From IMG/VR virus record IMGVR_UViG_3300046170_000519, positions 124,001 to 188,000 of that record: 64,000 bases of DNA. The stretch is one strand, 5' to 3'. Each line of letters starts with the position of its first letter. Within the stretch, counting starts at the first letter, position 1. The notes under the pieces were generated by a model that was given only the letters and a program-made list of their open reading frames with translations, was not told the origin of the DNA and searched no databases. Shown here piece by piece: positions 3,218 to 51,949 of this stretch. A program made the position numbers and the translations under genes.

Positions 3218-3651
3218 TACCTTCTTTTACTAGGAATGGCATAAAAACCAACAACCATGAAGCAAAGATCCATAAAAGATGCTAGCATTAAACCACCAGT
3301 CATTTTCACAATCTCCCAATCTTTAGCTCCAAAAATCCAGCCAAAAAAACCTAAACGAGAACTCTCTCCTTTGGGGACAATTAAATTGTATTCAATTTGA
3401 GGGTTAAAAGCATAATATATCATCAAAAAACACATTGTAAATGTGATTGACATAAACAAAATCCTTCTAGTAATTTTTACAAAAGGATCTTTAGCTTGTT
3501 CTGATTGACTCAAGATTAAAGCTTGCATCATTTTTTCATCTTTAATAGCTAACATCATTTGATCTTGACGCTTTTGTTCGAGCCAAGAGTTTAATAAATT
3601 GCATGCTAACTTAATCCCAGCTCCAACAATTGTATTTAAAACAGGTCCCAT
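3217..3651 (-). CDS. membrane protein, holin-like (3TM-holin-like layout)
   Basis: Amphipathic N-terminus, charged linker, then hydrophobic segments ILFMSITFTMCFLMIYYAF and GGLMLASFMDLCFMVVGFYAI, basic C-terminus SKRR. Confidence 0.5.
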   Translation of the reverse strand: MGPVLNTIVGAGIKLACNLLNSWLEQKRQDQMMLAIKDEKMMQALILSQSEQAKDPFVKITRRILFMSITFTMCFLMIYYAFNPQIEYNLIVPKGESSRLGFFGWIFGAKDWEIVKMTGGLMLASFMDLCFMVVGFYAIPSKRR

Positions 3652-3661
3652 ATATTATATA

Positions 3662-3666
3662 TACAC
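3662..3666 (-). promoter_or_regulatory. GTGTA motif (putative late promoter)
   Basis: Minus strand CCTGTGTATATATAATATATG upstream of the 3651 ATG. Confidence 0.45.
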
Positions 3667-3680
3667 AGGAAAAAGCTTTA

Positions 3681-4058
3681 TTAAGCATTATGTTTTTCAA
3701 AAACTTTTATACTTTTTGTGCTAGACCCTATAAATCTAATACAGGAATATTTAAAATTCCAAAAATCACAATAAGCTAAATTTTCACCACCTGAAATAGC
3801 ATGATCACTAATTAAACTCCAATGGTTTTGAAAGTCTGAACTAGCCGAATTTGTCGCAGGATCTGTATAATTAGAGCCTAAAATCTGAAATTGAACAGAC
3901 CCATTCCCTGCTTCGCTATGAACTTGATAGCTATGTAAGGTATATAATCTAACATCAATAATTGAGCTATAGTTTTTTGATGGGTCAGCATCAGTAATTT
4001 TATCCCAAGATGTGAAAGCTTCTGGACCTAAGTTACTCGTTAATTCTACTCTAGACAT
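3681..4058 (-). CDS. hypothetical beta-rich protein; paralog of the N-terminal domain of 46162-48831
   Basis: ORF 125 aa, coupled to neighbours; shares DxxxxxxHS(Y/F), SN...WxxI, LxYxxx(W/F)NF and HN motifs with the 889-aa protein N-terminus. Confidence 0.75.
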   Translation of the reverse strand: MSRVELTSNLGPEAFTSWDKITDADPSKNYSSIIDVRLYTLHSYQVHSEAGNGSVQFQILGSNYTDPATNSASSDFQNHWSLISDHAISGGENLAYCDFWNFKYSCIRFIGSSTKSIKVFEKHNA

Positions 4059-5191: not shown

Positions 5192-6205
5192 TTAAAAATC
5201 ATCTTCTAGAGATCCTGATTGTTGATACTCCCTAACTCTTCTTTCGAAAAAATTACCCATAGCTTGAACATCAACGACTTCCCCTAGCCAAGGAAATGGA
5301 TTATGATCGCTGGGAAAACGATAATCTAAACCTATAGCTTCTAATCTTCTGTTACCTATATAATGCATATAATCAACAAACATTTCAGCATTTAGACCCA
5401 AAATTCCTGTTGGTAAAACATCATGAGCATAAGATATTTCTAGCTCGACAGCTTTTTTTATGTGATCGATAAATTCTTGCTGAATATCTTTGGTCCAAAT
5501 AGAAGGATTTTGTTCGATTAATGTATTAATTAAATATGTACCAAAAGCTATATGAGAACTTTCATCCCTTAAAGTATACTTTATCTGATCAGAAATTCCT
5601 TGGAGTTTATTTTGACGACCAAGAGCTAAAAGCATGGCAAAGCCACTAAAGAAAAAAGTTCCTTCGCAAACAATCCAATATGTTAAAAAATTTCTTAATA
5701 TTTCTTGCTTCCCTTCTTTGTTGTGAGGGTTGAAGTCTTGACGACTAATGTCGTTAGTTATGCTCATTAAGAAATCATCTTTTGCTTTAATACTTGGAAT
5801 GTTTTCATAAGCAGCAAACACTTCTTCAATATTAAGATCAAGGCTATCACATATATATACTACCGTAAGATTGTGAAGACTTTCTTCAAAAGCTTGACGC
5901 AAAATGTACTGACGACACTCAGCATCAGTAATAAATCTAAAAGCCGAAAGAAGAAGGTTATTACCAACCAAAGACTCTGATCCAGCAAAAAACCCCAAAC
6001 AGCGTTTAACGAGCAATTTTTCATCATCTGTAATTTCATTATTTTTCCATTGTTTTATGTCGTTCTGCATGCTAATTTCAGTAGGCATCCAGTTATTAGC
6101 ACAACTTTTTAAAAATAAATCCCAAGCATATTTATGTTTGTGGGGTAAAATTCTATTAACTCCTGCTATATTTTTTGTTAAAAGTTCTCCTGTTTTATTA
6201 TCCAT
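5192..6205 (-). CDS. nrdB: ribonucleotide reductase beta subunit (R2), class Ic-like
   Basis: NNWMPTEI, FFAGSES, QAFEESLH, CEGTFFFSGF, RDESSH, NFFERRVREYQ; Glu as first ligand and Val at the radical-Tyr position. Confidence 0.96.
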   Translation of the reverse strand: MDNKTGELLTKNIAGVNRILPHKHKYAWDLFLKSCANNWMPTEISMQNDIKQWKNNEITDDEKLLVKRCLGFFAGSESLVGNNLLLSAFRFITDAECRQYILRQAFEESLHNLTVVYICDSLDLNIEEVFAAYENIPSIKAKDDFLMSITNDISRQDFNPHNKEGKQEILRNFLTYWIVCEGTFFFSGFAMLLALGRQNKLQGISDQIKYTLRDESSHIAFGTYLINTLIEQNPSIWTKDIQQEFIDHIKKAVELEISYAHDVLPTGILGLNAEMFVDYMHYIGNRRLEAIGLDYRFPSDHNPFPWLGEVVDVQAMGNFFERRVREYQQSGSLEDDF

Positions 6206-6262: not shown

Positions 6263-9200
6263 TTATTTATATGTTTTTCCACATATATCTATAAATCCAT
6301 TTTTTGAATATTCTTCATGCTCTGGAGTTCCATATAATATATTTAATTCTCCATTCCATACTGTTAAATCTAAAGAATTGAAAACATTTCCAATTTTATT
6401 TGCAAGTCCATGACTATAAACTCCATCATTAAAGCCAGCAAAATGCAAACCACAACCTTTTAAGGAGTCGCCGTCTTTTTTCATTAATAGTGAGCCTGAG
6501 TCACCAGAATCTGAAAAATAAATATTTTCCCCCTTGCCTCTATAGTATAAACAATCAGTGAAAATAGCTTTATGTTGCATAGATGGAACAACTTTAATGG
6601 AGCCCGTAGAGGGATCTAGAATTCTATCACTACAATAGTAAACATAACCCATCCAAGAGTCAGAAATTATTGAAGGATGTTCAGTAAAAGAGTTTTCAGT
6701 GGTAGAGCCCGTCGTCCTACCGCTTTTAAACACAAAATCTCCAACTTTTGCATCTGAGAATGATGGGGTATTATTAGTTAAATCAATAATCGAACTAGAG
6801 GGGAAAACACTTGCGCCAAAATTTATTGATGCAGCATCTACTGTATTAATTGGTTGAAAGCCATGGTTTCCATAGGAAGTTTTATTAAAAGGATGTGGAA
6901 AAAACAAAGGTTCGATATAATTTGTAGATCCAATATTTACCGATCCTGCTCCAAGGACAGTGTTTTGATCTAGAAAAGACGGACTAGAGATTTCTAAATC
7001 TAAAAGATTTTTATGAAAATCAGAAAGAGTGCCAGAATGATATTCAGAGTCTCCATTACCTCGTTCATCCGTAGAGCAACAAAAAGGGACTCCAAAAAAT
7101 AAAACATTTAAAGGTTGATTACTTGGCTTGGAACTCCAAGAAGTGTAATATATTTTTTTAAAAGTTTCATCAGAGGTTTGATAAGAAAATTCCATATACT
7201 CATCAGACATTAATATTGGATAAAAGCGAAAACTATTATTTTTAGATTTGCCATTTTTATATATGAGTGTGCCGTCATTTTTAAAAATAGAAACATTCGT
7301 CTCGACCTTGGAATATATAGAAGTTAAATTGCTTAAATCACTGTAAGTTAAACAAAAAGGTGAAGAATCTAGATTTAAACCCTTAAAAATATACTTCCTA
7401 CCAGCTTCAATAAAAGCAAAATCAGAATTGTCAAAAGCTGGATTTTTAAAAGAATCTCCAGAAATATCTTCAAAAATAAACCCGTTTTCATAAGATACAT
7501 TATAAGATATAGGAGGTTCTGTTTTTGGATCATAAACTTGAGAGCCGATAACATGGTTGTTAGTAACACAAACAAGCTCTTGGTCTTTATTGAGAGCGGA
7601 AAAACCTAAAGTTCCTGCAGAATAATCATTCGCCACCCCAATTGATACTCCTCCAGGAATGCACTTGTAGGGTTTTTTGTCAGAGTCGTAGGAATTTTGA
7701 GGGCAGCCATGAATTGATTTTTTTGAGGGAGATAGGCCATTAACTTTTTCGCCGCATGCGCCAAAAGCAAACATCTTAGGGACTTCTACGACATCTGTTT
7801 TAAAACCCTCTATCGAAGAGGGTATCAAATCTTCCTTCTTCAGTAAACTTTTTCCAACTTTTTTTGAAACCCCTACAGCAATACATTCTTGATGAGAATC
7901 TACACCATCTATAATTTTTGTAGAGACAAAAACACTTTCTACATTATTTTTTTGTAAAAGAAATTGAGTTGACGAAAAATTCATAGCTTGAGAGATATTT
8001 TTAAAATTATTTGAAGAGTTGAAATCGGAACTTGATGAAGATTCTAAAAGAAAAGAATTGCAGGATTCACAATCAATAAAGCCATCATAATAAGAAAGAT
8101 CGAAAGAATCTTGACATAGCTGGGCATAAGTTAAACGTTTGAGTCCACCCATGTAGCCATGGTTAAAACAATTATAGCTAACTGTATCAATGTCACCTTT
8201 TACATTTAAAGTAATATTTCCATAAAAATGTTCAATATTTAACCCGTCCACAACTTTGGTTCCCGCACTGTTTGAGCCAGTGACTTCAAGCACACTCGAA
8301 TCAGCCACAAATCCTAGAGCATGGATTTGGGGGACATTTTCAATTATATAAGTGCCTAAACCAATTCCAATAAATGAATGATTGTCATAATCAACTCCAT
8401 TAAATATAATTCGACTTGAACCATCAATACTAAAAGTATTGTTACCTTTCGATGATGGAATCAAGCATTGGACATATTGACCAGTAGATCTAAAACATTT
8501 ATCATTGTAGATAATAGAATCAGAAGATTCTGGTATCACAATTTTCTCTAAAGTTTTTCCTGTCGGTCTGGGAGGGCAGAGAGAACAATCATCAAAATTT
8601 TCGAAATCGCAATTTTCACCAGAAGATGTTGGAGTAATTGATAGAGTTGGGGGGATGCAATGATTGCAATTAATCGTATCGTCAAGAGAAGTTTGTGAAG
8701 GAGTTATAGGGATAATTAAACCAAAACTAGGAGTTATAGTTGGGAGAGGTAAAAAGTAAGGGCTTTTTGTTTTTGTATGAGTGAATGATCCTGTTTCAGT
8801 TTGCGTATAGGTTGCTGATTGAGTTTTAGTGAATGAACCTGTTTCGGTTATAGTATAAGAACCTGTTTCGGTTTGAGTTTCGGTCTCAGTCTGAGTCTGA
8901 GTCTCTGTTTGAGTCTGAGTACCAGTTTCTGTTTGGGTCTGAGTACCAGTTTCTGTTTGGGTCTGAGTACCAGTTTCTGTTTGAGTCTCCGTAGGTGTCG
9001 GATTCTCTATTATCGTTGCTGTAGGGGGCTGTGTGTTAGTTAAACTCGGAACTGGCTGTGTGTTAGTTGAACTCGGAACTGTTTGAGTGGGAGGAAGTTC
9101 TACCCTGTCAGTAAATGGAGCAGTCTCCGTAGGTGTCCCACGAAGAGGATTCTCTGTCTTTGTTCCTGTCTCAGTTCGAACTGTTAATGTCGGAGTATTC

Positions 9201-12200
9201 GTCTGAGTCTCTGTCTCAGTCTCCGTCTCCGTCTCGGTCTCAGTCTCGGTCCCCGTCTTTGTCGCACTAAAAGTATTTGTTTGAGAATTTGTTTGCGTTG
9301 GAGTATAAGCTGTATTCGAAGGGGTTGCATCAGGCGTTTCTGTTGGGCATAAACCATCTGGACAAGTCTCATGCCCACAACACAAGCCATCAACGGAAGA
9401 GCAACGATAATCACAAAAACCAGCACAATCTCCTAAGTCACAAAGAGATGTACTTGATCTAGATTCTCCCTGAGGAAGATTATAGTAACAAGTCCAAAAA
9501 TCCCCTGGATTATCATGCCATTTATATGGACCTTCGCTGCATGGATTAGTATCATTTCTCTCGTAGACACTTTGAGCATTGCATGGATCTTCCCCATTAG
9601 CTCGCCTTGGCAGTTGACTGTTGTCAAGACCTTGGTAATCCATGTAATAACAACCTTGAGGTGGACCTGAGCATGTATAATCCCCTTCTGGGTCAGAATC
9701 ATTTGGGCAAGTTAGACACTTGGTACGCATGCTTCCATAAGAGACATCACAAGGATCATCACAACATTGACTTCTAAAGCATTGATCTAAATGATAAAGA
9801 GTACATTTTCTACAACGATCTCTGTAATAACACTCAGTAATTTTTAATGTAACACCTGATCTGTTGGTATATTCTTCTAAAAGATCTGGAAAATCAGGAT
9901 CAATAACTTCTCCGTAATTACAAGCTCTACCAAAAGGTAATCCACCGTCTTCATTTGGAATTCCATTAGGAGCTGTATCCCAGCATCTTTTTGGGGTTTT
10001 TGTAGGAGTATCAGGAATTGTTTTTGTTTTTGTTTCTGTAAATGGACCTGTGATTGTCCCTGTAGTTGTCTGGCTATCTGTATCTGTATCAGTTTCTGTA
10101 TCAGTTTCTGTATCAGTTCCTGTGTTAGTTTTTGATGGGGTTTTAGTTTTTGTTGGGGTTTTTGGTTTTGTAGAAGTTCCTGAGTAAGTAAATGAATATG
10201 TTTCAGTATTTGTGGCAGTAGCAGTTTCAGAAAAAGTAGGAGTTGAGCTATCAGAAGCAGTATCACTTTCTGGAGCTGTTGCAGTTTCTGGAACACTATC
10301 ACTCGGTGGACTGTCAGTTGCACATTCGACTCCACAACAACTCTCTTCACAATCATAATGTAATTGTGGATGAGTTGAGCCTTTAGGCAATTCAGCACCA
10401 CATGGAATTTCAGGAGGCAAATTGAAGCATGAATCCCCTAATTTAGTACACCATTTTTCATTGTATATACAAGTATCTTTTGAGCATTCACAACCCGCTT
10501 CTTCTACAGTCGCATCTCTACACTCAGCAAGAAATAAACATTCAGGCTTGTAGTTAGAAGCGCAAGGGTCATTACAGCATTTAGTGGGTGATGCTGTGAT
10601 TGTGGGTGTTGATGTATGTGAACCCGTCTCTGTGATCGTATTAGAAAATGTATAAGTTTCCGAAGTTGTGATCGTATTAGAAAATGTATAAGTTTCCGAA
10701 GTCGTATCTGTATAGGTTTCTGTACCTGTTTCTGTGTACGTTACTGTTCCTGAGTAACTAGGTGTTGGGGTCGCTTCACAGTCATCACAATCACTATATG
10801 TATTTGATTCTTGTATCGCAGCTAATAATCCATCGGGTGGCGAATCTACTGGAGCACTACCACAAGTTAATGCATCGTTGTAGCTAACATATATACAGCA
10901 ATCTCCAAGTTTATAAACTCCCGTTTGAAGTATAGAAGGAAGGCAAAAATTAGAGCTTTCAATTATATAAGGATTGTCACAGCCGTAGTAACAAGGATAA
11001 AAATCATGAACATAACCAGTACTTGTTTCTGTGGGAGTAGATGTATGTGAGGCTGTGCTTGAGTAAGTTTTTGTATATGAAGCTGTATATGTTTGCGAAG
11101 ATGAACTCGTATGCGATGAAGTATAAGTATCAGTTGCCGAACCTGTTTCAGTAAAGGTAGATGTTGGGCATTTTGCATCATTTTCACATTTTTCACAACA
11201 ACATTCACAAGAATACGTGCCACAATTGTCAGCATCTGAATAAAGAGGTAAATTACTTCCAGGAGTATAAAGATAACAGCCCGAACAATTACATGTTTCA
11301 GTGTAGCTGGTAGTGATTGTAGCAGTTCTTGTTAAGGTGTTTGTTTGGGTCTGTGTCTGAGTTTGTGTCTGAGTCTGTGTCTTAGTTGGTGTCTGAGTTT
11401 TTGTCTTAGTTTGTGTTTTTGTACTAGTCTGGGTTTTGGTTTTAGTTGCTGTTTTTGACGGTGTTTCTGTTGGCGGTAAAGATGGAGTTCTGGTGGGGCA
11501 TACGCAATCACCATTATTTAAACCAGCTCCATTTGTTGCTCCAGAGTTATTAGTAGCACAATTTTGTTGATCTACACAAACCCAGTCCAGACATGTTGAT
11601 CCATCAGGAGCTAAACCTCCACCTTCTCTAGTGTAATCATCATTGTTGGATTTTATTTTATATCCAAGACTTTCTCCTGTGCAGCGATCAAAGAATTCAA
11701 GACATCCTGTCTCACATGGACAGCAATGATCGCAATGATGATTGTTGTTATCGCAATCTGTTTGAGTGCATTCCTGTAATGTAGCCGCAGAGCGACAGAA
11801 AGTATTTGTGTAGGTAGGAGTGAAACTTTGAGTTTTAGTAAATGAGCCTGTTTCTGTTTTGGTGTTTGTAAAGGATCCTGTTTCTGTTGTAGTCTGAGTC
11901 TGAGTTTCGGTTTGTGTTTTTGTGCGTGTTTGTGTGTCTGTTTCAGTAAAGGTAGATGTTGGGCATTTTGCATCATTTTCACATTTTTCACAACAACATT
12001 CACAAGAATACGTGCCACAATTGTCAGCATCTGAATAAAGAGGTAAATTACTTCCAGGAGTATAAAGATAACAGCCCGAACAATTACATGTTTCAGTGTA
12101 GCTGGTAGTGATTGTAGCAGTTTGTGTTAAGGTGTTTGTGCTTGTTAAAGTTTCGGTTCTCGTTTGTGTGAAAGATCCTGTTTCTGTTTGAGTAAAAGAA

Positions 12201-15200
12201 CCTGTTTCTGTTTGAGTTTGTGTTTTAGATGGGGTTTTAGTTCGAATCGTTTTCGTAGGTGATGGTGGCAACGATGGAGTTCTGGTGGGGCATACGCAAT
12301 CACCATTATTTAAACCAGCTCCATTTGTTGCTCCAGAGTTATTAGTAGCACAATTTTGTTGATCTACACAAACCCAGTCCAAGCATGTTGATCCATCAGG
12401 AGCTAAACCTCCACCTTCTATGGTATAGTCATCATTGTTGGATTTTATTTTATATCCAAGACTTTCTCCTGTGCAGCGATCAAAGAATTCAAGACATCCA
12501 CTCTCACATGGACAGCAATGATCGCAATGATGATTGTTGTTATCGCAATCCGTGGAGTTGCATTCTTGACCAGTAGAAGCATCAAGACAGCGAGTGTCTG
12601 TATAAGTGAATGTAGTTGTTTCAGTTTCTGTGTTTGTTTTTGTAGGAGTAAGCTTTGTTTTTGTTGTTGTACTTGTTTTTGTGGGTGTAAACTTTGTTTC
12701 TGTTTCTGTGTTTGTTTTTGTAGGAGTAAGCTTTGTTTCTGTAGGACTAAGCTTTGTTTCTGTAGGAGTAGGAGTAAACTTTGTTTCTGTTTCTGTGTTT
12801 GTTTTTGTAGGAGTAAGCTTTGTTTCTGTAGGAGTAGGAGTAAACTTTGTTTCTGTTTCTGTGTTTGTTTTTGTAGGAGTAAGCTTTGTTTCTGTAGGAG
12901 TAGGAGTAAACTTTGTTTCTGTTTCTGTGTTTGTTTTTGTAGGAGTAAGCTTTGTTTCTGTAGGAGTAGGAGTAAACTTTGTTTCAGTTTCTGTGTTTGT
13001 TTTTGTAGGAGTAAGCTTTGTTTCTGTAGGAGTAAGTTTTGTTCCTGTAGGAGTAGGAGTGAGTTTCGTTTTTGTTGCTGTGCTTGTTTTTGTAGGTGTA
13101 AGGATTGTTCCTGTAGGACTTGCTTTTGTCTGAGTTGGTGTCGCTACAGTAGGTGTTAAACAAACACCATTTATGTCAAGATGGCAATCGTCACTTATTA
13201 CTCCACCTGGGGCATTAGCTATATCATTGAAGGTACAACCTTCTGGAGGTATACAAACAGCTGGTTGATTAAATGTTCCAGCAAAACATGGGTGAGCTGA
13301 AATCGTAGGATCTGTATTACAAAATCCTGATACAGTACAAGGGCATTCACAACCACTATTAGGTTCGTCGCAATATATACAATCTATATACTCGCATGTT
13401 CCTGCATAATTTTGACCTGGATTACTAAAGTTACAAGCCATAGGATCATGGCAAACACCTGTTGGCGTAATTGTTTTTGTCGGAGTACCTTTTGTTTGTG
13501 TCGGACTTAGTTTTGTTTCAGTGGATGTTGAGGTTAATGGAGGTGTTGATGTTAGTGTTTTTGGCAACGATGGGGTTCTGGTGGGGCATACGCAATCACC
13601 GTTATTTAAACCAGCTCCATTTGTTACTCCAGAGTTATTAGTAGCACAATTTTGTTGATCTACACAAACCCAGTCCAAGCATGTTGATCCATCAGGAGCT
13701 AAACCTCCACCTTCTATGGTATAGTCATCATTGTTGGATTTTATTTTATATCCAAGACTTTCTCCTGTGCAGCGATCAAAGAATTCAAGACATCCACTCT
13801 CACATGGACAGCAATGATTGCAATGATGGTTATTATTCTGGCAATCTATGAAAGTGCATTCTTGCAATGTAGCAGCAGAACGACAGAAGGTATTTGTATA
13901 AGTGGGTGTTTTAGTCTCAGTATTTGTTTGAGTTTGTGTTGCTGTTTGCGTCTGAGTTTTTGTTGCTGTTTTTGTTTGTGTACTAGTTTGAGTTTTTGTA
14001 CTTGTTTTTGTTGGAGTTCTTTCTGTTTCAGTGAAGGTGGATGTTGGGCATTTTGCATCATTTTCACATTTTTGACAACAACATTGACAATCGTAGGAAC
14101 CGCAATTGTCGGCATCTGAGAAAAGAGGAAAGGCACTACCAGAACTAGAAAGGTAACAACCCGAACAATTACATGTTTCAGTGTAGCTGGTAGTAATTGT
14201 AGCAGTTCTTGTTAAGGTTTCTGTGTTAGTTAAAGTTTCTGTGTTAGTTAAAGTTTCTGTATTGCTCGGAGTTTCTGAAGGGGTTTTAGTAGGTGTTGAG
14301 GTTAATGGAGGTGTTAGTGTTGGTGTTTTTGGTAAAGATGGAGTATTGGTTGGACATGTGCAAGAGCCATTATTTAAACCAGCCCCATTTGTTGTTCCAG
14401 AGCTATTGGTAACACAATTTTGTTGATCTACACAAACCCAGTCCAAGCATGTTGATCCATCATTGCCTGAACCTCCACCTTCTATGGTATAGTCATCATT
14501 GTTGGATTTTATTTTATATCCAAGACTTTCTCCTGTGCAGCGATCAAAGAATTCAAGACATCCACTCTCACATGGACAGCAATGATCGCAATGATGGTTA
14601 TTATTCTGGCAATCTATGACAGTGCATGTTTGACCAGTAGAGGCATCAACACAAGGAGTCTCTGTTTTAGTTGGACTGCTCGTTTCAGTTTGCACGGTTT
14701 CTGTAGGAGCAGTATTACTTGAAGTAGGCTCAATAGTATTTGAAGGTGTAGCTACTGTAGCGGTTGGGCAGGGAAGATTGCAGTAAATCTCTACATGGCA
14801 TAGAGCGTCACGGTCATAATTACAATCCAATGGATCCATGCAAGCACCTTTGTTAATACAAAGATTGGTATCATGACACCATCCAGGTTGTGAACCAAAT
14901 ACGCTCGCTCTAGGATCATACTCACAATATTGAGCGTAACCACATGCATACTCACAACTAGGAGTTGGTGTTAAATCTGGAGTGTTTGTGTATGTATGAA
15001 CCGTATCTGTATGAACCGTATCTGTATGAACCGTATCTGTATGAACCGTATCTGTATGAACCGTATCTGTATGAACCGTATCTGTATAAGCTGTATTTGA
15101 AGGAGTCAACCTCGTTCCTGTGGGAGTAAGCTTTGTTCCTGTAGGAGTAGGAGTGAGCTTTGTTCCTGTAGCAGTTACAACCGTATCTGTATGAGCTGTA

Positions 15201-18200
15201 TCTGTATGAACCGTATCTGTATGAACCGTATCTGTATGAACCGTATCTGTATGAACCGTATCTGTATGAACCGTATCTGTATAAGCTGTATTTGAAGGAG
15301 TCAACCTCGTTCCTGTGGGAGTAAGCTTTGTTCCTGTAGGAGTAGGAGTGAGCTTTGTTCCTGTAGCAGTTACAACCGTATCTGTATGAGCTGTATCTGT
15401 ATGAGCGGTATCTGAATGCGGTGTATCTGAATGCGGTGTATCTGAATGCGGTGTATCTGATGGATTAGGGCTATATGTAGGAAGAGGACTATCGGTAGGA
15501 AGAGGGCTATCGGTTCGGCAGCTAATATATTCACAACTTCCATCGTCACAATTTGCCCAAGAGCTATAATTGCAAGCCGATTGATCTGTGCAACCTTTAT
15601 TTCTAAGACCGCTACAAAGATCTGGGTCATGGCAACCCGCATCTGGATCGAAGCTACAATCTGCAGCAGATTTACAACCAAAATTTCCTGAACAACAACC
15701 ATCACATTGACAATCAGCATCAGGATCATAATTACAATAGCCTGGATTTTGACAACCAATAACACCTTGACCGCAGTTACCCTGAGAATCTTTACAGCAA
15801 ATATTGTCTAAACGACCTCCAGAACAACATTCGCTTTCATCATGACAAACTCCTGTTGGATCTCCTGTATAAAAAAGGCAATCGTTTTGATTTAAACACG
15901 CGAATTGAATGCAGTAAGTTGGGGATAAAGTTGGAGTTTTGTCTGGAGAAGGTGAGCTTGTTAAAGTTAACGGAGGTGTGTTAGTGTTTGTTGGACAAAT
16001 AGTACCAATGCAGAGATTTTCTAAATGACATATCGCAGATCTATCATAATTGCAATCCCCTAATGTTTGGCATCCCCCGCTATGACCGCTACATAAAGTA
16101 TTGTCAGCGCATTTTGTTGGGTCATCATCATAATAGCAATCGGTCGCTATCTTACAAACATAACCTTCGCAACAAGGAGCTTCAGCAGGACCAGTTCTGT
16201 GTTTACAGCATGTTGTAAGATCATCACAATCTGAACCATCAAAAGCTGGATCAAAAGGATCTGGGCAGCCGTAAAGATAACATGTTTCAGTATTTGTTAC
16301 TGGCGGAGTCTCTGTTTCTGTAGCAGGTGGGGTTTGTGTTGGAATAGTCGCTGTAGGAACAGGGACAGTATCTGTTGGGCAAGGTTGACAACCCCCAGTT
16401 AAGCAAGCTACATTACTATTTCCAAGATGATTTAAACACTCATTGCTAGGCGAAATGACATCATTGCATGCAAACTGTGGATGCCTAGCAGCTAAGGCAC
16501 CATTAGGACACCAACAGTATTCGTTAGTCTTGGCACAATCTTTTGGTGGGGTAGCTCCGTAATTAACATCACAAGGGTCATCACAACTGCAGGTAGAATC
16601 ATTTCTTTTAAATTCTGGATCCCCTATTTCTCGACATACACCGCAAGCATCAATGTAGTAGCATTTATCGTTTTGAACCCCTGTAGAGGTAAAACTACAA
16701 CTATGAGATGTATCTGGACAAGGCTGAAAAGTAGCTTCAACGCCAGTACCCGCTCCATAAACATAAGGGTCATCACAATCAGGAACACATGTTCTTGATG
16801 GAGTAACAGGTGGAGATGGAGTGTCTGCAGTAGGGCTGATTGTGTTTGTAACAGCAGGTGTGTCTGTTGGGCAAAGCTCTGGTTGAGGTGGACATCTACC
16901 CTCGCAATCAGGCTCTCCTTCGCATTTATCAGCATCCATTTTACACGCTGTTGGGTCGTAGTTACAATCACCTTGCAATAAACATCCCCCTTCCCTACCT
17001 GAGCAAAGGGAATCAGTGTCGCAACCTCTGTTCGGATCGAAATTACAATCTTTAGGATCTGGGCAACCTCTGTAAGTTCCTGAACATTTACTTGGATCAC
17101 TGCAAGGAGCATTAGGGTTAAAGTTACAATCATTAGCGTCTTTACAATCGCATTGATTTGGGCAATCCGAGCAAGATAAACTATATCCAGCTTGATAATT
17201 ATCAAAATTAGGTGGACCATAATTTTGGCCTGTCCATCGAGTTTCACAAAAACAACCCACATATGAAACAGCAAGTTCACAAGTTCCGTCTCCTAGAGCT
17301 GTAATTCCAGTAACTCCAGTAGTATAAATTCTTGGACCCGTAGACTGTCCTGTAATCGTATCGCAAGTGTAAACCGCTATACAAGGACCTGCTGTACATG
17401 TCTGAGTTTCTGTTCCACTATTTGTAGAGGTATCTGTATGAGCCGTATCTGTATGAGCCGTATCTGTATGAGCCGTATCTGTATGAGCCGTATCTGTATG
17501 AGCCGTATCTGTATGAGCCGTATCTGTATGAGCCGTATCTGTATGAGCCGTATCTGTATGAGCCGTATCTGTATGAGCCGTATCTGTATGAGCCGTATCT
17601 GTATGAGCCGTATCTGTATGAGCCGTATCTGTATGAGCCGTATCTGTATGAGCCGTATCTGTATGAGCCGTATCTGTATGAGCTGTATCTGTATGAGCTG
17701 TATCTGTATGAGCCGTATCTGTATGAGCCGTATCTGTATGAGCCGTATCTGTATGAGCCGTATCTGTATGAGCCGTATCTGTATGAGCCGTATCTGTATG
17801 AGCCGTATCTGTATGAGCTGTATCTGTATGAGCTGTATCTGTATGAGCCGTATCTGTGTAAACTAATGTTGGTGTAAGTGGAGGAGAATAGGTAGAAGTA
17901 TTACAATCGTATTCACATCCATCGACGCAGCTCGCTGATAAAGACATATCTTTATTAGTTTCATAATTGCAAGCATTAGGATCATTACACACGTCATTTT
18001 GACTACAAAGAGCGAGATTAACACAAGCTGGAGCTATTCCATCTTGAAAATCTGCAGAGCAGTAAGAAGTACTACCCGAAAGGTCATCGCCGCATGCATA
18101 ATCTTCACAACTACATTGAAATCCGTCATCGATTGTAGCATCAGGGTCATAATTTCCATAAGACCCATCATATAAAACATCCATGCAACCTAGTATTCCT

Positions 18201-18409
18201 GTAGGCGTCGGTTGAGGAGATGTAGTGTTACTAGGAGTGGGATTAACTGAAGCAGAAGATTGTTCTGTAAAATAAATTTTCGCCCCTTGTTTTAAATTAG
18301 AATCAAAAATATTATTATAAACTAATAATTTATTAATAGATATTCCATAGCTATCAGAAATACTCTTTAAAGTATCTGATTTTGAAACAATATGGAATTT
18401 ATTATTCAT
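6263..18409 (-). CDS. giant 4048-aa modular protein: LysM - Cys-rich repeats - Thr-rich stalks - cupredoxin-like domain - trypsin-like (S1) serine protease
   Basis: N-terminal HIVSKSDTLKSISDSYGISINKLLVYN (LysM); GCxDxxxCNYDxxA repeats; C-terminal TNNHV / VDAA / GDSGS triad; uninterrupted ORF. Confidence 0.9.
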   Translation of the reverse strand: MNNKFHIVSKSDTLKSISDSYGISINKLLVYNNIFDSNLKQGAKIYFTEQSSASVNPTPSNTTSPQPTPTGILGCMDVLYDGSYGNYDPDATIDDGFQCSCEDYACGDDLSGSTSYCSADFQDGIAPACVNLALCSQNDVCNDPNACNYETNKDMSLSASCVDGCEYDCNTSTYSPPLTPTLVYTDTAHTDTAHTDTAHTDTAHTDTAHTDTAHTDTAHTDTAHTDTAHTDTAHTDTAHTDTAHTDTAHTDTAHTDTAHTDTAHTDTAHTDTAHTDTAHTDTAHTDTAHTDTAHTDTAHTDTAHTDTAHTDTAHTDTAHTDTAHTDTSTNSGTETQTCTAGPCIAVYTCDTITGQSTGPRIYTTGVTGITALGDGTCELAVSYVGCFCETRWTGQNYGPPNFDNYQAGYSLSCSDCPNQCDCKDANDCNFNPNAPCSDPSKCSGTYRGCPDPKDCNFDPNRGCDTDSLCSGREGGCLLQGDCNYDPTACKMDADKCEGEPDCEGRCPPQPELCPTDTPAVTNTISPTADTPSPPVTPSRTCVPDCDDPYVYGAGTGVEATFQPCPDTSHSCSFTSTGVQNDKCYYIDACGVCREIGDPEFKRNDSTCSCDDPCDVNYGATPPKDCAKTNEYCWCPNGALAARHPQFACNDVISPSNECLNHLGNSNVACLTGGCQPCPTDTVPVPTATIPTQTPPATETETPPVTNTETCYLYGCPDPFDPAFDGSDCDDLTTCCKHRTGPAEAPCCEGYVCKIATDCYYDDDPTKCADNTLCSGHSGGCQTLGDCNYDRSAICHLENLCIGTICPTNTNTPPLTLTSSPSPDKTPTLSPTYCIQFACLNQNDCLFYTGDPTGVCHDESECCSGGRLDNICCKDSQGNCGQGVIGCQNPGYCNYDPDADCQCDGCCSGNFGCKSAADCSFDPDAGCHDPDLCSGLRNKGCTDQSACNYSSWANCDDGSCEYISCRTDSPLPTDSPLPTYSPNPSDTPHSDTPHSDTPHSDTAHTDTAHTDTVVTATGTKLTPTPTGTKLTPTGTRLTPSNTAYTDTVHTDTVHTDTVHTDTVHTDTVHTDTAHTDTVVTATGTKLTPTPTGTKLTPTGTRLTPSNTAYTDTVHTDTVHTDTVHTDTVHTDTVHTDTVHTYTNTPDLTPTPSCEYACGYAQYCEYDPRASVFGSQPGWCHDTNLCINKGACMDPLDCNYDRDALCHVEIYCNLPCPTATVATPSNTIEPTSSNTAPTETVQTETSSPTKTETPCVDASTGQTCTVIDCQNNNHHCDHCCPCESGCLEFFDRCTGESLGYKIKSNNDDYTIEGGGSGNDGSTCLDWVCVDQQNCVTNSSGTTNGAGLNNGSCTCPTNTPSLPKTPTLTPPLTSTPTKTPSETPSNTETLTNTETLTNTETLTRTATITTSYTETCNCSGCYLSSSGSAFPLFSDADNCGSYDCQCCCQKCENDAKCPTSTFTETERTPTKTSTKTQTSTQTKTATKTQTQTATQTQTNTETKTPTYTNTFCRSAATLQECTFIDCQNNNHHCNHCCPCESGCLEFFDRCTGESLGYKIKSNNDDYTIEGGGLAPDGSTCLDWVCVDQQNCATNNSGVTNGAGLNNGDCVCPTRTPSLPKTLTSTPPLTSTSTETKLSPTQTKGTPTKTITPTGVCHDPMACNFSNPGQNYAGTCEYIDCIYCDEPNSGCECPCTVSGFCNTDPTISAHPCFAGTFNQPAVCIPPEGCTFNDIANAPGGVISDDCHLDINGVCLTPTVATPTQTKASPTGTILTPTKTSTATKTKLTPTPTGTKLTPTETKLTPTKTNTETETKFTPTPTETKLTPTKTNTETETKFTPTPTETKLTPTKTNTETETKFTPTPTETKLTPTKTNTETETKFTPTPTETKLSPTETKLTPTKTNTETETKFTPTKTSTTTKTKLTPTKTNTETETTTFTYTDTRCLDASTGQECNSTDCDNNNHHCDHCCPCESGCLEFFDRCTGESLGYKIKSNNDDYTIEGGGLAPDGSTCLDWVCVDQQNCATNNSGATNGAGLNNGDCVCPTRTPSLPPSPTKTIRTKTPSKTQTQTETGSFTQTETGSFTQTRTETLTSTNTLTQTATITTSYTETCNCSGCYLYTPGSNLPLYSDADNCGTYSCECCCEKCENDAKCPTSTFTETDTQTRTKTQTETQTQTTTETGSFTNTKTETGSFTKTQSFTPTYTNTFCRSAATLQECTQTDCDNNNHHCDHCCPCETGCLEFFDRCTGESLGYKIKSNNDDYTREGGGLAPDGSTCLDWVCVDQQNCATNNSGATNGAGLNNGDCVCPTRTPSLPPTETPSKTATKTKTQTSTKTQTKTKTQTPTKTQTQTQTQTQTQTNTLTRTATITTSYTETCNCSGCYLYTPGSNLPLYSDADNCGTYSCECCCEKCENDAKCPTSTFTETGSATDTYTSSHTSSSSQTYTASYTKTYSSTASHTSTPTETSTGYVHDFYPCYYGCDNPYIIESSNFCLPSILQTGVYKLGDCCIYVSYNDALTCGSAPVDSPPDGLLAAIQESNTYSDCDDCEATPTPSYSGTVTYTETGTETYTDTTSETYTFSNTITTSETYTFSNTITETGSHTSTPTITASPTKCCNDPCASNYKPECLFLAECRDATVEEAGCECSKDTCIYNEKWCTKLGDSCFNLPPEIPCGAELPKGSTHPQLHYDCEESCCGVECATDSPPSDSVPETATAPESDTASDSSTPTFSETATATNTETYSFTYSGTSTKPKTPTKTKTPSKTNTGTDTETDTETDTDTDSQTTTGTITGPFTETKTKTIPDTPTKTPKRCWDTAPNGIPNEDGGLPFGRACNYGEVIDPDFPDLLEEYTNRSGVTLKITECYYRDRCRKCTLYHLDQCFRSQCCDDPCDVSYGSMRTKCLTCPNDSDPEGDYTCSGPPQGCYYMDYQGLDNSQLPRRANGEDPCNAQSVYERNDTNPCSEGPYKWHDNPGDFWTCYYNLPQGESRSSTSLCDLGDCAGFCDYRCSSVDGLCCGHETCPDGLCPTETPDATPSNTAYTPTQTNSQTNTFSATKTGTETETETETETETETQTNTPTLTVRTETGTKTENPLRGTPTETAPFTDRVELPPTQTVPSSTNTQPVPSLTNTQPPTATIIENPTPTETQTETGTQTQTETGTQTQTETGTQTQTETQTQTETETQTETGSYTITETGSFTKTQSATYTQTETGSFTHTKTKSPYFLPLPTITPSFGLIIPITPSQTSLDDTINCNHCIPPTLSITPTSSGENCDFENFDDCSLCPPRPTGKTLEKIVIPESSDSIIYNDKCFRSTGQYVQCLIPSSKGNNTFSIDGSSRIIFNGVDYDNHSFIGIGLGTYIIENVPQIHALGFVADSSVLEVTGSNSAGTKVVDGLNIEHFYGNITLNVKGDIDTVSYNCFNHGYMGGLKRLTYAQLCQDSFDLSYYDGFIDCESCNSFLLESSSSSDFNSSNNFKNISQAMNFSSTQFLLQKNNVESVFVSTKIIDGVDSHQECIAVGVSKKVGKSLLKKEDLIPSSIEGFKTDVVEVPKMFAFGACGEKVNGLSPSKKSIHGCPQNSYDSDKKPYKCIPGGVSIGVANDYSAGTLGFSALNKDQELVCVTNNHVIGSQVYDPKTEPPISYNVSYENGFIFEDISGDSFKNPAFDNSDFAFIEAGRKYIFKGLNLDSSPFCLTYSDLSNLTSIYSKVETNVSIFKNDGTLIYKNGKSKNNSFRFYPILMSDEYMEFSYQTSDETFKKIYYTSWSSKPSNQPLNVLFFGVPFCCSTDERGNGDSEYHSGTLSDFHKNLLDLEISSPSFLDQNTVLGAGSVNIGSTNYIEPLFFPHPFNKTSYGNHGFQPINTVDAASINFGASVFPSSSIIDLTNNTPSFSDAKVGDFVFKSGRTTGSTTENSFTEHPSIISDSWMGYVYYCSDRILDPSTGSIKVVPSMQHKAIFTDCLYYRGKGENIYFSDSGDSGSLLMKKDGDSLKGCGLHFAGFNDGVYSHGLANKIGNVFNSLDLTVWNGELNILYGTPEHEEYSKNGFIDICGKTYK
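11155..14640 (-). repeat. interspersed Cys/His-rich modules: module A x4 (~95 aa), module B x3 (~50 aa)
   Basis: NNNHHCxHCCPCExGCLEFFDRC...CPT at ~14350-14640, 13575-13870, 12275-12570, 11485-11780; TCNCSGCYL...CCCxKCENDAKCP at ~14040-14190, 11950-12110, 11155-11310. Confidence 0.9.
12705..13060 (-). repeat. 66-bp tandem repeat encoding TPTPTETKLTPTKTNTETETKF
   Basis: About 4-5 near-identical in-frame units. Confidence 0.85.
14995..15450 (-). repeat. 15-bp (HTDTV/HSDTP)n repeats within a 195-bp tandem duplication
   Basis: gtatctgtatgaacc units; block ataagctgtatttgaaggagtcaac recurs at 15086 and 15281. Confidence 0.85.
17430..17857 (-). repeat. 15-bp tandem repeat encoding (HTDTA)28
   Basis: gtatctgtatgagcc repeated 28 times with only synonymous gcc/gct changes. 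Confidence 0.95.
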
Positions 18410-18412: not shown

Positions 18413-20053
18413 TTAAAAAAGTCTATCGATTAATCCATGTTTAAACATTAAATTAGGAGGAAATTTCGGAAAAGTTTTATCAATAGCAAATTCAGGTAAA
18501 ACCTTTTGGTTTTGGCTATTAAATTGCCCAGAAAAAGGGTTTAAATGAAAAGACATTTTTTCAGTTCTTTTTATAGAAGTAAAAGATTCATAACCACTTG
18601 ATATAAATCGAACATCTGGCTCAAATATATAAGACAAAGAGATATGTAGAACTGGAGATCCTACATAAATTTTAGATTTATAAATTGGATCATCAACATA
18701 CCTTCTCCAAAAATAAGAACCATCATTAAAATTAAAATTAAATGGGTAACTTTTTAATATTAAAAAATTATCATCAGAATTATAATTTAAAGCTGTTGAA
18801 TATAATTCTAATTCTCCAGAAGAAAAAGAATAATCTCCTTCATTGTAAGTTATATCTTGATTAATTACAAAATGAGGAAGATTGCTATAATCTAAAGTAG
18901 TAAGCCAGTCATCTATAGAGTATAAAGCTGAAGGAAGTTCATTAAACCAATATTGTGTATTTAAGGAACATAAATTAAAGTTTACATCTTCAACATTTAT
19001 GGTATTTTTAGTAAATAATTTTTTAAATAAAGATTCGTCTTTAATAAGCTGTTCAGAGTTTTGTGTTATTGTCGGTGTTTCGCTAGTATAACAAAGCACT
19101 GAAGCAAAATTACGAGGAGTATAATCTCCCAGAAGCGCTCTAAAAACAGATCCACTGTAAGCATAATCACTTTTATAACAAGAAGTTGGGTCATGAGTTA
19201 AAGTTTCGGTTGGTTCGGTTTTTAAATAAAAATCGTTAGACGCATTAATAGCCCCTTCTTCTACATTACTGTCGCTAGAGATTAATTCGCCGTATTGATT
19301 TTCGTTAATAAATGTAGCTAAATGTTCATAAAAACAATCATAATCTCCGCAACTTTTATAAAAAACTCTATAATCCGAATCGGTTGAATTAACTTTTTCT
19401 GTTACTTCTGAAACTCCATGAAAGACAGACTCATGAGAAAAATGAGGTTTATCTCCGCATAATAAAACAGTGTCAGTATTAATAGCTTCAAATAGTTCAA
19501 TATTAGTTATTGTTTCAGTATGAGTTGGGGTAAAGGGTGAATGAGTTTCAGTGAAAGTTGGGGTTGAGCATATTGAGCTACTAATAAGTGGAGGTGTAGT
19601 AAAAAAACTAGCATTTATATTTTTACTAAAACAGCCTTGATTGCAGTAAAAGACTGGACGATAATAATAAGCAGTTGATTTATCATTGCTGTACCAATAT
19701 TCCCAGTTTTGAATAATATCAACACTTTCATCTATATTGCTGTCGACAAATGAATCCATAAATAATGCTGCACAAGTTACTTCAGGAGAAGAATAGGTTT
19801 CAGTAGAACAATCGTAAGTCCAGGAGACAGCACACATTGAAGAATCTATTGATAATGACTCTTCGCAACAGTAAGAAACTGTATAAAGATTATTGCCATC
19901 TTTAGTTACTCCGTTTACGCTAAGAATATTTAAAGATAAAGTTGAACTGGTGCAGTCATTAATATAAGGCAGTACGTCAGCAAAACTACTAAGCTTATCT
20001 GCTGTCGAAATAGTAATTTCAGAATTTTCAGGACATTTTTTATTTGAAGACAT
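18413..20053 (-). CDS. hypothetical 546-aa protein, Cys-containing N-terminus, short TPT linkers; probable structural accessory protein
   Basis: Long ORF, 3 nt from the 4048-aa start, GTGTA motif upstream. Confidence 0.8.
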   Translation of the reverse strand: MSSNKKCPENSEITISTADKLSSFADVLPYINDCTSSTLSLNILSVNGVTKDGNNLYTVSYCCEESLSIDSSMCAVSWTYDCSTETYSSPEVTCAALFMDSFVDSNIDESVDIIQNWEYWYSNDKSTAYYYRPVFYCNQGCFSKNINASFFTTPPLISSSICSTPTFTETHSPFTPTHTETITNIELFEAINTDTVLLCGDKPHFSHESVFHGVSEVTEKVNSTDSDYRVFYKSCGDYDCFYEHLATFINENQYGELISSDSNVEEGAINASNDFYLKTEPTETLTHDPTSCYKSDYAYSGSVFRALLGDYTPRNFASVLCYTSETPTITQNSEQLIKDESLFKKLFTKNTINVEDVNFNLCSLNTQYWFNELPSALYSIDDWLTTLDYSNLPHFVINQDITYNEGDYSFSSGELELYSTALNYNSDDNFLILKSYPFNFNFNDGSYFWRRYVDDPIYKSKIYVGSPVLHISLSYIFEPDVRFISSGYESFTSIKRTEKMSFHLNPFSGQFNSQNQKVLPEFAIDKTFPKFPPNLMFKHGLIDRLF

Positions 20054-50764: not shown

Positions 50765-50810
50765 AATATGTTTATTATGAATAGTAAATTACTTTTACTA
50801 AAAATCTAAA

Positions 50811-51587: not shown

Positions 51588-51589
51588 GA

Positions 51590-51949
51590 TTAAATAAAGT
51601 TTGATATATGATCACTACTAAAAGAAAAATAAAAAGAATCTTCATTTAAATAGTAAGTATTTTTGAAATTAAATGGCAAACTTTTATCACTTTTATAAAT
51701 TATAACATGATTCAGGAGATTAACAGGTAATTCATAATCTTTAGATGATCTTATATTTTTAAAAATTTTTTTTAAAAAAACCTCATGATCAGAACTTAAA
51801 CTTATTAAATAAAAAATAGAATTATTTAATAGCAAGCTACATTTGTTCATTTGAGCTACTAAAGTATTAGTTAAATGAATAGGTAATTGAGGTGCATAAA
51901 TACCCACACAAAATTTATTGTTTTTTTTAATTGAATTATATACGCTCAA
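51590..51949 (-). CDS. hypothetical protein
   Basis: 119-aa ORF overlapping its neighbours in the sugar operon. Confidence 0.65.
   Translation of the reverse strand: MSVYNSIKKNNKFCVGIYAPQLPIHLTNTLVAQMNKCSLLLNNSIFYLISLSSDHEVFLKKIFKNIRSSKDYELPVNLLNHVIIYKSDKSLPFNFKNTYYLNEDSFYFSFSSDHISNFI

What the first reader, a model, noticed from the sequence alone, without database searches (positions are those of the whole stretch)
6263..18409. 4048-aa LysM-to-protease protein: glycan anchor at one end, serine protease at the other
Seen: N-terminal LysM; dozens of Cys-rich modules separated by Thr/Pro spacers; a C-terminal S1 protease with His (7553), Asp (6836) and GDSGS Ser (6497), preceded by a KKV...LIPSSIEGFKTDVVEV pro-region-like segment; no signal peptide. 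Inference: a virion fibre that binds peptidoglycan/GlcNAc and cuts proteinaceous surface layers, or self-processes fibre precursors.
Basis: partly seen in the sequence, partly recalled or inferred. Interest (0 to 1): 0.78.

Follow-up and report, generated by a model that had tools for sequence, protein, structure and literature searches.

The report
Giant phage fibre gene fused to protease
A real 4048-residue gene of an abundant uncultured marine phage joins a sugar-binding LysM head, about twenty cysteine-rich knots on threonine-rich spacers, a copper-protein-like domain and a plant-NAL1-like serine protease; the protease is a separate neighbouring gene in related phages.

Summary
Window 6263-18409 (-) is one intact 4048-codon ORF. 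It has a canonical N-terminal LysM, 274 Cys in about 20 blocks, 18 Thr-rich spacers and no signal peptide or membrane segment.

The tools add four points.
- The protease is NAL1-like (VIA Z 26 to rice NARROW LEAF 1). Its core resembles alpha-lytic proteases (Z 19.7, 2.2 A). The supposed pro-region matches NAL1's ATP-binding-domain region.
- About 165 all-beta residues sit between His and Asp. They look cupredoxin-derived.
- A second, cupredoxin-like domain with an H/C/H/M ligand set precedes the protease.
- In related phages the protease is its own ~580-aa gene, between a giant Thr/Cys-rich gene and RNR-small. Here stop, spacer and start are gone. Two independent assemblies confirm the in-frame junction.

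The genome is a 206-kb seawater tailed phage with a 3302-aa tape measure protein.

Most likely it is a long, flexible virion appendage carrying a protease. That role, and the protease's substrate, are inferred, not shown. It is a new variant of a known kind.

The parts
6263..18409 (-). Whole ORF, 4048 codons plus stop; predicted 435 kDa, pI 4.5, 17.9% Thr, 6.8% Cys
18275..18394 (-). LysM domain, aa 6-45
   Evidence: Pfam PF01476 above cut-off; phrog_1274; PDB 4uz2 E 5e-6
17903..18187 (-). First Cys-rich block, aa 75-169 (12 Cys, one CNY knot)
17430..17857 (-). (T-D-T-A-H) x30 spacer: 15-nt perfect tandem repeat, 28.5 copies
8576..17398 (-). Modular body, aa 338-3278: about 18 Cys-rich blocks alternating with Thr-rich spacers
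11168..14653 (-). Internally duplicated stretch, aa 1253-2414: 4 copies of the ~100-aa NNNHHC...CCPCE module and 3 copies of the CNCSGCY...CCC module (68-76% identical copies)
   Evidence: self-BLAST; motif counts
8105..8476 (-). Cupredoxin-like beta-sandwich, aa 3312-3435, with type-1-copper-like ligand set H3363, C3414, H3417, M3420 (C-x2-H-x2-M)
   Evidence: alignment A2; model pLDDT 84.5; all top-50 PDB matches are cupredoxin-fold copper proteins but weak; Atlas fold matches in Uroviricota proteins incl. crAss_MUZ_C, TM 0.66-0.75; no Pfam hit
7967..8071 (-). Fusion junction and Ser/Asn-rich linker, aa 3447-3481; relatives have the stop of the giant gene, a 22-39 nt spacer and the protease start here; internal Met3476 lies near the start used by the P0002-type relative
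   Evidence: junction confirmed by independent contigs
7766..7966 (-).
   Evidence: profile match to the NAL1 region holding ABD plus first barrel; NAL1 domain limits from PMC12012508; weak Pfam NAL1_N
7535..7666 (-). First part of beta-barrel 1 with catalytic His3619 (TNNHV; codon 7553-7555)
7040..7534 (-). Nested all-beta insertion, aa 3626-3790, between His and Asp; cupredoxin-derived by motif (HPF...YYQCxxHxxMG kept in 4 of 12 relatives, lost here)
6266..7039 (-). Rest of the protease: Asp3858 (6836-6838), KSGRTTG, barrel 2 with GDSGS Ser3971 (6497-6499), C-terminal helices

Best explanation
Shown: this is one intact gene of an abundant, uncultured, roughly 206-kb marine tailed phage. It arose by an in-frame fusion of two neighbouring genes. 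Gene (a) is a giant acidic, mucin-like gene: a LysM head, about 20 Cys-rich knots on Thr-rich spacers, and a cupredoxin-like beta-sandwich of a type common in phage tail proteins. Gene (b) is a conserved ~580-aa serine protease of the NAL1-like / alpha-lytic-like chymotrypsin fold, with an invariant His-Asp-Ser triad and a nested cupredoxin-derived domain. Inferred: the product is a very long, flexible virion appendage that carries an active endoprotease on a leash at its C-terminal, probably distal, end. The protease would act outside the cytoplasm, either on proteins of the host surface or on the phage's own Thr-rich fibre proteins. LysM would supply a glycan or baseplate anchor. The Thr-rich spacers may be O-glycosylated by the phage's own sugar enzymes.
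For: Gene is real: intact ORF. An independent contig from another sample (run X12) covers 7295-8700 with 0 differences, and an RNA-library contig covers 8026-8244. A separate JGI contig, L028, is 98% identical and also fused. At least 15 seawater runs hold the sequence. Phage context: PHROG DNA polymerase, DnaB, UvsX; 3302-aa tape measure protein; distant large terminase. All lie on the same strand, with the giant ORFs between the tail and replication genes. Protease: NAL1 E 1e-10 by profile; Foldseek E 8e-15; VIA Z 26.3 to NAL1 and 19.7 to L5 protease; phrog_20754 'protease' E 2.8e-16; invariant triad. Fusion: the protease is a separate gene directly upstream of RNR-small in relatives, and the upstream giant gene ends ...DCExCNF... 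plus a stop 22 nt before the ATG. Functional link: in L030 and L032 the same protease is N-terminally fused to Thr-rich spacers plus a cupredoxin or Cys-rich modules. Other phage homologues carry (TP)n or Ser-rich linkers and binding-type modules, among giant ORFs and an RCC1 tail protein. The penultimate domain's fold matches Uroviricota proteins, including crAss_MUZ_C. Glycosylation potential: 3 epimerase/dehydratases plus UDP-glucose dehydrogenase and 2 GT2 glycosyltransferases.
Against: There is no proteomic or structural evidence that the protein is in virions. The gene lies 53 kb from the tape measure gene and next to nucleotide-metabolism genes (RNR-small, dUTPase). The nearest characterised relative, NAL1, is an intracellular cage protease. 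274 Cys made in a reducing cytoplasm is awkward for a disulfide-knotted fibre. Protease activity, substrate, copper binding, LysM ligand and glycosylation are all untested. Triad geometry could not be measured because model coordinates are not exposed. An internal start at Met3476, or cleavage at the linker, could still give two proteins.
Confidence: 0.5

Rival explanations
1. Maturation or self-processing protease. The C-terminal module cleaves itself off at the Ser/Asn-rich junction, or after the ABD-like domain, and trims the phage's giant Thr-rich precursors during assembly. The fused ORF would then be a polyprotein, not a fibre that carries a working enzyme.
For: Relatives make the protease as a free protein next to the giant gene. 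Both fused and unfused states are tolerated. The junction is a low-complexity linker, and a low-confidence loop (model residues 69-78) separates the ABD-like domain from the core. Alpha-lytic-type proteases, the closest core fold, are known from the literature to be made with a cleaved N-terminal folding domain.
Against: No cleavage site is known. NAL1 keeps its N-terminal domains. Known phage fibre self-processing uses S74 Ser-Lys chaperone domains, which are absent here.
Confidence: 0.22
2. Virion-associated cell-wall endopeptidase. LysM docks on peptidoglycan, and the alpha-lytic / L5-like protease cuts peptide stems or cross-bridges to help genome delivery.
For: LysM is closest to peptidoglycan-binding LysMs. 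The protease core superposes best on Lysobacter L5 and alpha-lytic-type enzymes (Z 17-20). From my own knowledge, these include bacteriolytic enzymes.
Against: LysM and protease are about 3,400 residues apart, and in relatives they are on different proteins. Whether relatives' giant genes carry a LysM is unknown (one search found none). Fold similarity does not give substrate.
Confidence: 0.13
3. Intracellular, non-virion protease working like NAL1 (an oligomeric cage degrading selected host or phage proteins). The fusion would be incidental, and the protease would be made mainly from the internal start at Met3476.
For: NAL1 is the best overall structural and sequence match, including the ABD-like domain. 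There is conserved synteny with RNR-small, dUTPase and NUDIX genes. The phage uses no Shine-Dalgarno sites, and the AT-rich sequence before Met3476 resembles ordinary starts. The P0002-type relative starts at the equivalent position.
Against: There are repeated, independent fusions of this protease family to Thr/Pro/Ser-rich linkers and binding-type modules. The cupredoxin-like modules have folds seen in phage tail proteins.
Confidence: 0.12
4. Assembly artefact: two genes joined, or the repeat region mis-assembled, so the 4048-aa ORF does not exist.
For: It is a metagenome assembly with perfect tandem repeats. A neighbouring 19-kb repeat gene shows frame switches.
Against: The junction is reproduced with 0 differences in a contig from another sample and in a separate JGI assembly. 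There is no stop in 12.1 kb.
Confidence: 0.03

Closest known systems
Rice NARROW LEAF 1 (NAL1) serine protease (PDB 7y77, 8pn2, 8hat; PMC12012508)
   Same: Chymotrypsin-fold protease domain preceded by a small beta-rich domain equivalent to the region of NAL1's ATP-binding domain. The His (TNxHV) and GDSGS Ser motifs align. Profile E 1e-10, Foldseek E 8e-15, VIA Z 26.3 over 298 residues.
   Different: 13-19% identity. About 165 residues are nested between His and Asp, with no counterpart in NAL1. It is attached to a 3,480-aa modular protein and is phage-encoded. Hexameric cage formation and ATP binding were not tested. Pfam NAL1_N and Nal1_C score below cut-off.
Alpha-lytic-protease-type S1E enzymes (Lysobacter L5 protease 5mrt, NAPase 2oua, 6xhz)
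   Same: The two-barrel catalytic core superposes at rmsd 2.2-2.8 A over 183-187 of about 190 residues, Z 17-20. The His-Asp-Ser order is the same. NCBI names one family member 'S1 family peptidase'.
   Different: No sequence-level match (E 0.3-0.9). It carries a nested domain and an ABD-like N-terminal domain, is not a secreted bacterial enzyme, and has no recognisable alpha-lytic pro-region.
Free-standing phage proteases of phrog_20754 and the ~580-690-aa marine family (P0001-P0010)
   Same: These are direct homologues at 33-49% identity over the whole module, including the insertion, with the same synteny with RNR-small.
   Different: They are separate genes, or carry C-terminal extensions (L030, L032). 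Only this phage, and its 98% twin L028, has the module at the C-terminus of the giant gene. Some relatives keep the H/C/H/M motif in the insertion; this one has lost it.
Cupredoxins (amicyanin, rusticyanin, T1-copper domain of laccases, CueO, CotA)
   Same: H...C-x2-H-x2-M ligand pattern with amicyanin-like spacing at the C-terminal end of an all-beta domain. Every one of the top 50 PDB fold matches is a cupredoxin-fold copper protein, aligned to the T1-copper domains.
   Different: The matches are weak (Z at most 5.4, TM about 0.4). There are no Pfam or PDB sequence hits. The domain occurs as a module or tandem repeat in giant viral and surface proteins. Copper binding is untested.
Peptidase S74 intramolecular-chaperone domains of phage tailspikes and fibres
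   Same: A protease located at the C-terminus of a phage fibre-like protein.
   Different: S74 has a different fold and catalytic type (Ser-Lys dyad), and there is no sequence hit here. This module is a His-Asp-Ser chymotrypsin fold.

Membership tests
LysM domain (PF01476) | Match to the family HMM above the curated cut-off | tested here: met
   25.2 and 28.5 bits against a cut-off of 20.9, aa 6-45; PDB LysMs 4uz2 E 5e-6
LysM domain (PF01476) | Binding of GlcNAc-containing glycans (peptidoglycan, chitin) | not testable with these tools
   Needs a pull-down with sacculi or chitin
PA-clan / family S1 serine protease | Double beta-barrel chymotrypsin fold | tested here: met
   Model pLDDT 84.8; VIA Z 19.7, rmsd 2.2 A, 187 of 193 residues of L5 protease; 115 chains with Z of 8 or more
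PA-clan / family S1 serine protease | His, Asp, Ser in that order, conserved, with Ser in GDSG | tested here: met
   H3619, D3858, S3971 invariant in 14 sequences; His and Ser motifs align with NAL1's
PA-clan / family S1 serine protease | Triad side chains within hydrogen-bonding distance | not tested
   Model coordinates are not exposed by the tools; only whole-domain superposition is available
PA-clan / family S1 serine protease | Match to Pfam Trypsin (PF00089) or Trypsin_2 (PF13365) | tested here: not met
   No hit at E up to 1 for this protein; Trypsin hit in 2 of 14 relatives
NAL1-like protease | Sequence and fold match covering both the N-terminal (ABD-region) domain and the protease domain | tested here: met
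   Profile E 1e-10 in two stretches; Foldseek top 34 hits all NAL1; Z 26.3 over 298 residues
NAL1-like protease | Pfam NAL1_N / Nal1_C above gathering score | tested here: not met
   NAL1_N 13.8-15.3 bits against a cut-off of 27; among relatives, NAL1_N in 7 of 14 and Nal1_C in 5 of 14 at E below 0.05
NAL1-like protease | Hexameric cage and ATP binding | not tested
   Three or more copies of the module exceed the size limit of the complex predictor
Cupredoxin (type-1 copper) | Greek-key beta-sandwich fold | tested here: inconclusive
   All top-50 hits are cupredoxin-fold proteins, but Foldseek E is 9e-4 to 7e-2 and VIA Z is at most 5.4
Cupredoxin (type-1 copper) | His...Cys-x(2-4)-His-x(2-4)-Met ligand set | tested here: met
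   H3363, C3414, H3417, M3420. Cys and the second His are nearly invariant and Met is invariant across 16 sequences; most rows have the first His in an HP motif
Cupredoxin (type-1 copper) | Match to Pfam Copper-bind or another cupredoxin HMM | tested here: not met
   No hit in 16 members; PDB profile search empty
Phage tail fibre / virion appendage | Homology or fold match to proven virion proteins, or a position in the tail module | tested here: inconclusive
   Same strand as, and downstream of, the tape measure gene but 53 kb away; one domain matches Uroviricota clusters including crAss_MUZ_C, TM 0.75; no PHROG tail hit
Peptidase S74 fibre chaperone | S74 HMM match / Ser-Lys dyad domain | tested here: not met
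   No Pfam hit; the fold is chymotrypsin-like

The most novel reading that the evidence does not exclude
The phage displays half-micrometre, O-glycosylated, disulfide- or metal-knotted 'tentacles' that end in a serine protease. A blue-copper-type domain is nested inside the protease's catalytic core and a second one sits beside it. This would be a copper- or redox-sensing virion enzyme that is switched on only in oxic seawater or at the host surface. Such a class of phage appendage has not been described.
Probability: 0.1. Interest if true: 0.85.

Novelty: new variant of a known kind. Interest (0 to 1): 0.6.

Why it matters
NAL1 is an agronomically important plant protease with poorly characterised relatives. 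This finding shows a large, unannotated branch of the same fold in marine phages and bacteria, and a natural fusion that ties it physically to giant mucin-like phage proteins. If the protein is a virion appendage, it would be among the largest phage structural proteins. It would also be an example of an enzyme on a long leash used in host recognition or surface degradation, in a phage that occurs in many seawater samples. The nested cupredoxin-like domain, with an intact copper-ligand motif in some relatives, gives a directly testable question: can copper or redox state control a chymotrypsin-fold protease?

Tried and rejected
- Giant virus origin: no NCLDV capsid, although nothing rang in that search's control genomes either, so the miss proves nothing. 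PHROG replication genes and a tape measure protein show a tailed phage.
- Whole-protein Pfam found only LysM. NCBIfam gave nothing beyond LysM-containing enzymes.
- A single-sequence PDB search of the protease found nothing. Only the family profile reached NAL1.
- The weak HisK_sensor hit in the insertion was dismissed as below cut-off.
- A search for giant proteins (2,226-7,084 aa) with a similar N-terminus found none.
- The Atlas feature search of the Cys-rich body gave only weak Haptophyta and Binary_toxB leads, with scores of 0.79 or less and low recognition. The fold of these modules remains unknown.
- Profile comparisons of the two cupredoxin-like domains with each other, and with a clear cupredoxin from L030, aligned little more than the ligand motifs. 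The PDB profile search of the insertion gave only noise.
- PHROG annotation of neighbours, here and in related loci, was mostly empty.
- HK97 capsid and Terminase_6C Pfam models found nothing in the genome. Terminase was found by tblastn instead. A capsid candidate had no phage match.
- No close cultured phage relative exists.
- Literature searches for phage NAL1-like proteases and for cupredoxin tail fibres found nothing relevant.
Full report
1. The observation.
Window 6263-18409 on the minus strand is one uninterrupted ORF of 4048 codons. Its ATG lies 3 nt after the stop of the upstream ORF. The product is predicted at 435 kDa, pI 4.5, 17.9% Thr and 6.8% Cys. Pfam finds a LysM at aa 6-45, above the curated cut-off. 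Its nearest solved relatives are peptidoglycan- or chitin-binding LysMs.

The 274 cysteines fall into about 20 blocks separated by 18 Thr-rich, Cys-free spacers totalling 1,506 residues. The spacers include a perfect (TDTAH)x30 array. Recognisable sub-modules are:
- ten CN[YF]-type knots;
- four copies of a ~100-aa NNNHHC module;
- three copies of a CNCSGCY module.

There is no signal peptide or membrane segment. The only caveat is that repeat copy numbers from short reads are uncertain.

2. Where it sits.
The window is bases 124001-188000 of a 205,857-bp IMG/VR virus record, rated 100% complete by CheckV, with 34% GC. It is a tailed phage, not a giant virus. The evidence:
- PHROG DnaE-like polymerase, DnaB and UvsX;
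- a 3302-aa tape measure protein;
- a distant large terminase.

It has no close cultured relatives. Near-identical sequence is present in at least 15 seawater runs. Genes lack Shine-Dalgarno sites. Several giant ORFs lie between the tail genes and the replication genes on one strand: 2980 aa, this one, and a ~19-kb (TETQ)n region.

3. The C-terminal module.
An exhaustive HMMER search with aa 3286-4048 found 808 proteins. They fall into two unrelated sets.

Set one covers aa ~3482-4047. It consists of free-standing proteins of 556-692 aa, 33-49% identical. In a 14-sequence alignment His3619, Asp3858 and Ser3971 are invariant. The family profile hits only rice NARROW LEAF 1 convincingly in the PDB (E 1e-10). 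It does so in two stretches: the region of NAL1's ATP-binding domain plus barrel 1 up to the catalytic His, and barrel 2 with GDSGS.

The AlphaFold model (pLDDT 84.8, pTM 0.86) gives three results:
- NAL1 as the top 34 Foldseek hits (E 8e-15);
- VIA Z 26.3 to NAL1;
- Z 19.7, at rmsd 2.2 A over 187 of 193 residues, to the S1E L5 protease, followed by NAPase, an alpha-lytic homologue and HtrA/Deg enzymes.

PHROG calls the family 'protease' (phrog_20754, E 2.8e-16), and NCBI names one member 'S1 family peptidase'. Pfam Trypsin models do not hit this protein, and NAL1_N scores below cut-off.

The module is therefore a chymotrypsin-fold serine protease of a NAL1-like branch. The 'pro-region-like' segment is the counterpart of a domain that NAL1 retains.

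4. A domain nested in the protease.
His and Asp are 239 residues apart, against 57 in NAL1 (H234 and D291). The extra ~165 residues (aa 3626-3790) are all-beta and confidently modelled. They are conserved in the 556-692-aa family.

Four of 12 relatives keep HPF...YYQCxxHxxMG, which is the type-1 copper ligand pattern. This protein has lost it. A pairwise profile alignment to a clear cupredoxin at the C-terminus of the L030 protein spans both motifs (72 columns, 33% identity, E 0.004). That L030 domain itself matches amicyanin weakly. The cupredoxin origin of the insertion is therefore an inference, not a demonstrated fold match.

5. The domain before the protease.
Set two of the search matches aa 3312-3435. 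This ~120-aa domain is found alone or in up to 14 tandem copies in giant proteins that also carry RCC1, DUF4347 or HYR domains. It has a nearly invariant C-x2-H-x2-M-G-G motif and, in most sequences, an upstream HP motif. Here the residues are H3363, C3414, H3417 and M3420.

Neither Pfam nor PDB sequence searches recognise the domain. Its model (pLDDT 84.5) matches only cupredoxin-fold copper proteins among the top 50 PDB hits, aligned to their T1-copper domains. The scores are weak, with Z at most 5.4. Much better fold matches (TM 0.66-0.75, rmsd 1.9-2.9 A) are to unannotated Uroviricota proteins. These include a cluster carrying the crAss muzzle C-terminal domain.

6. The ORF is a gene fusion.
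In relatives the protease is its own gene, immediately upstream of RNR-small, as here, and immediately downstream of another gene. In the P0002-type phage that upstream gene is Thr- and Cys-rich. It ends ...DCE(K/E)CNF... plus a few residues and a stop, 22 nt before the protease ATG. In this phage the text runs ...DCESCNSF directly into LLESSSS..., which matches the N-terminus (MLESSS...) of the closest relative, P0001.

So the last codons, the stop, the spacer and the start have been lost in frame. The junction (8030-8071) is reproduced as follows:
- without a difference in a contig from another sample;
- in an RNA-library contig;
- in a separate JGI assembly, L028, which is 98% identical and also fused.

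An internal Met3476, preceded by ordinary AT-rich sequence, lies close to the start used by P0002. Separate initiation therefore cannot be excluded.

7. Evidence for a functional link.
- In L030 the protease is the N-terminus of a 970-aa protein that continues into Thr-rich spacers and a cupredoxin.
- In L032 it heads a protein of at least 1377 aa with long Thr-rich spacers and Cys-rich modules.
- In L033 and L073 it stands alone.
- More distant phage homologues are fused to (TP)n or Ser-rich linkers and binding-type modules. They sit among giant ORFs and next to an RCC1 tail protein.

Repeated fusion in different orientations argues that the protease works physically together with these mucin-like proteins.

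8. Interpretation.
Shown: gene integrity, domain identities, the fusion, and abundance in seawater.

Inferred: a long, flexible virion appendage carrying an active protease. It might be glycosylated, since the phage encodes three epimerase/dehydratases, a UDP-glucose dehydrogenase and two GT2 transferases.

Rival explanations are a self-processing polyprotein, a LysM-guided cell-wall endopeptidase, and an intracellular NAL1-like protease made from the internal start. None is excluded. An assembly artefact is nearly excluded.

9. Verdict.
The object is a new architectural variant of a known protease kind, with two unexpected cupredoxin-like modules. Interest is moderate to high.

Noticed in passing
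window 21700-40744, minus strand: About 19 kb of (T-E-T-Q)n coding repeat. The Thr-rich reading phase switches frame at least four times, so this is either one ~6,500-aa gene broken by assembly errors or several ORFs. The listed 2201-aa ORF (34139-40744) ends in an out-of-phase Lys/Arg/Leu-rich tail.
   Followed up: partly
window 1-2794 (ORF continues upstream to genome 117852-126794): A second giant ORF of 2980 aa with Cys-rich modules (163 Cys) and Thr/Pro-rich spacers. A 96% identical copy is on L028 and a 28-52% relative is on L029. In phages L073 and L075 its place is taken by two ORFs of about 700-800 aa.
   Followed up: partly
genome 195713-205621 (L008:7713-17621): Tape measure protein of 3302 aa (phrog_4211, E 9.5e-32), which implies an exceptionally long tail. 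The large terminase is at genome 16875-18731.
   Followed up: partly
window 48907-57040; genome 75826-76269 and 67541-67882: Three NAD-dependent epimerase/dehydratases and a UDP-glucose dehydrogenase lie in the window, and two GT2 glycosyltransferases elsewhere. The phage could make and attach its own sugars, perhaps to the Thr-rich spacers.
   Followed up: partly
window 52753-55206 and 5192-6205: The ribonucleotide reductase large and small subunit genes are 47 kb apart, separated by the giant ORFs. The RNR-small gene is the conserved right-hand neighbour of the protease in all relatives seen.
   Followed up: yes
window 59103-60359: A 418-aa ORF with a below-cut-off Tetraspanin match (29 bits against a cut-off of 32.1) and a DUF4834 match; an odd membrane-protein-like gene in a phage.
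   Followed up: no
whole genome: Only 18 of 125 long ORFs have a Shine-Dalgarno-like 4-mer upstream. Start regions are simply AT-rich, as in hosts that do not use SD sites (for example Bacteroidota).
   Followed up: partly
L030:12085-12474: The 970-aa protease protein of a related phage ends in a textbook cupredoxin motif (HPF...YYYQCTIHSSMIG; amicyanin E 0.04).
   Followed up: partly
window 18413-20053: The 546-aa upstream neighbour has no family hit but is conserved (26-30% identity) in the related phages L030, L033, L073 and L075. In L075 it is fused behind a copy of the cupredoxin-like domain.
   Followed up: partly
L025:1493-3712, L020:9971-13000, L023:9941-12412: Other phage NAL1-like proteases carry different large insertions or extensions: a CBM-like insert, an extension whose sequence looks (by eye) like a formylglycine-generating-enzyme domain, and (TP)n linkers. 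This protease scaffold appears to tolerate domain grafting.
   Followed up: no
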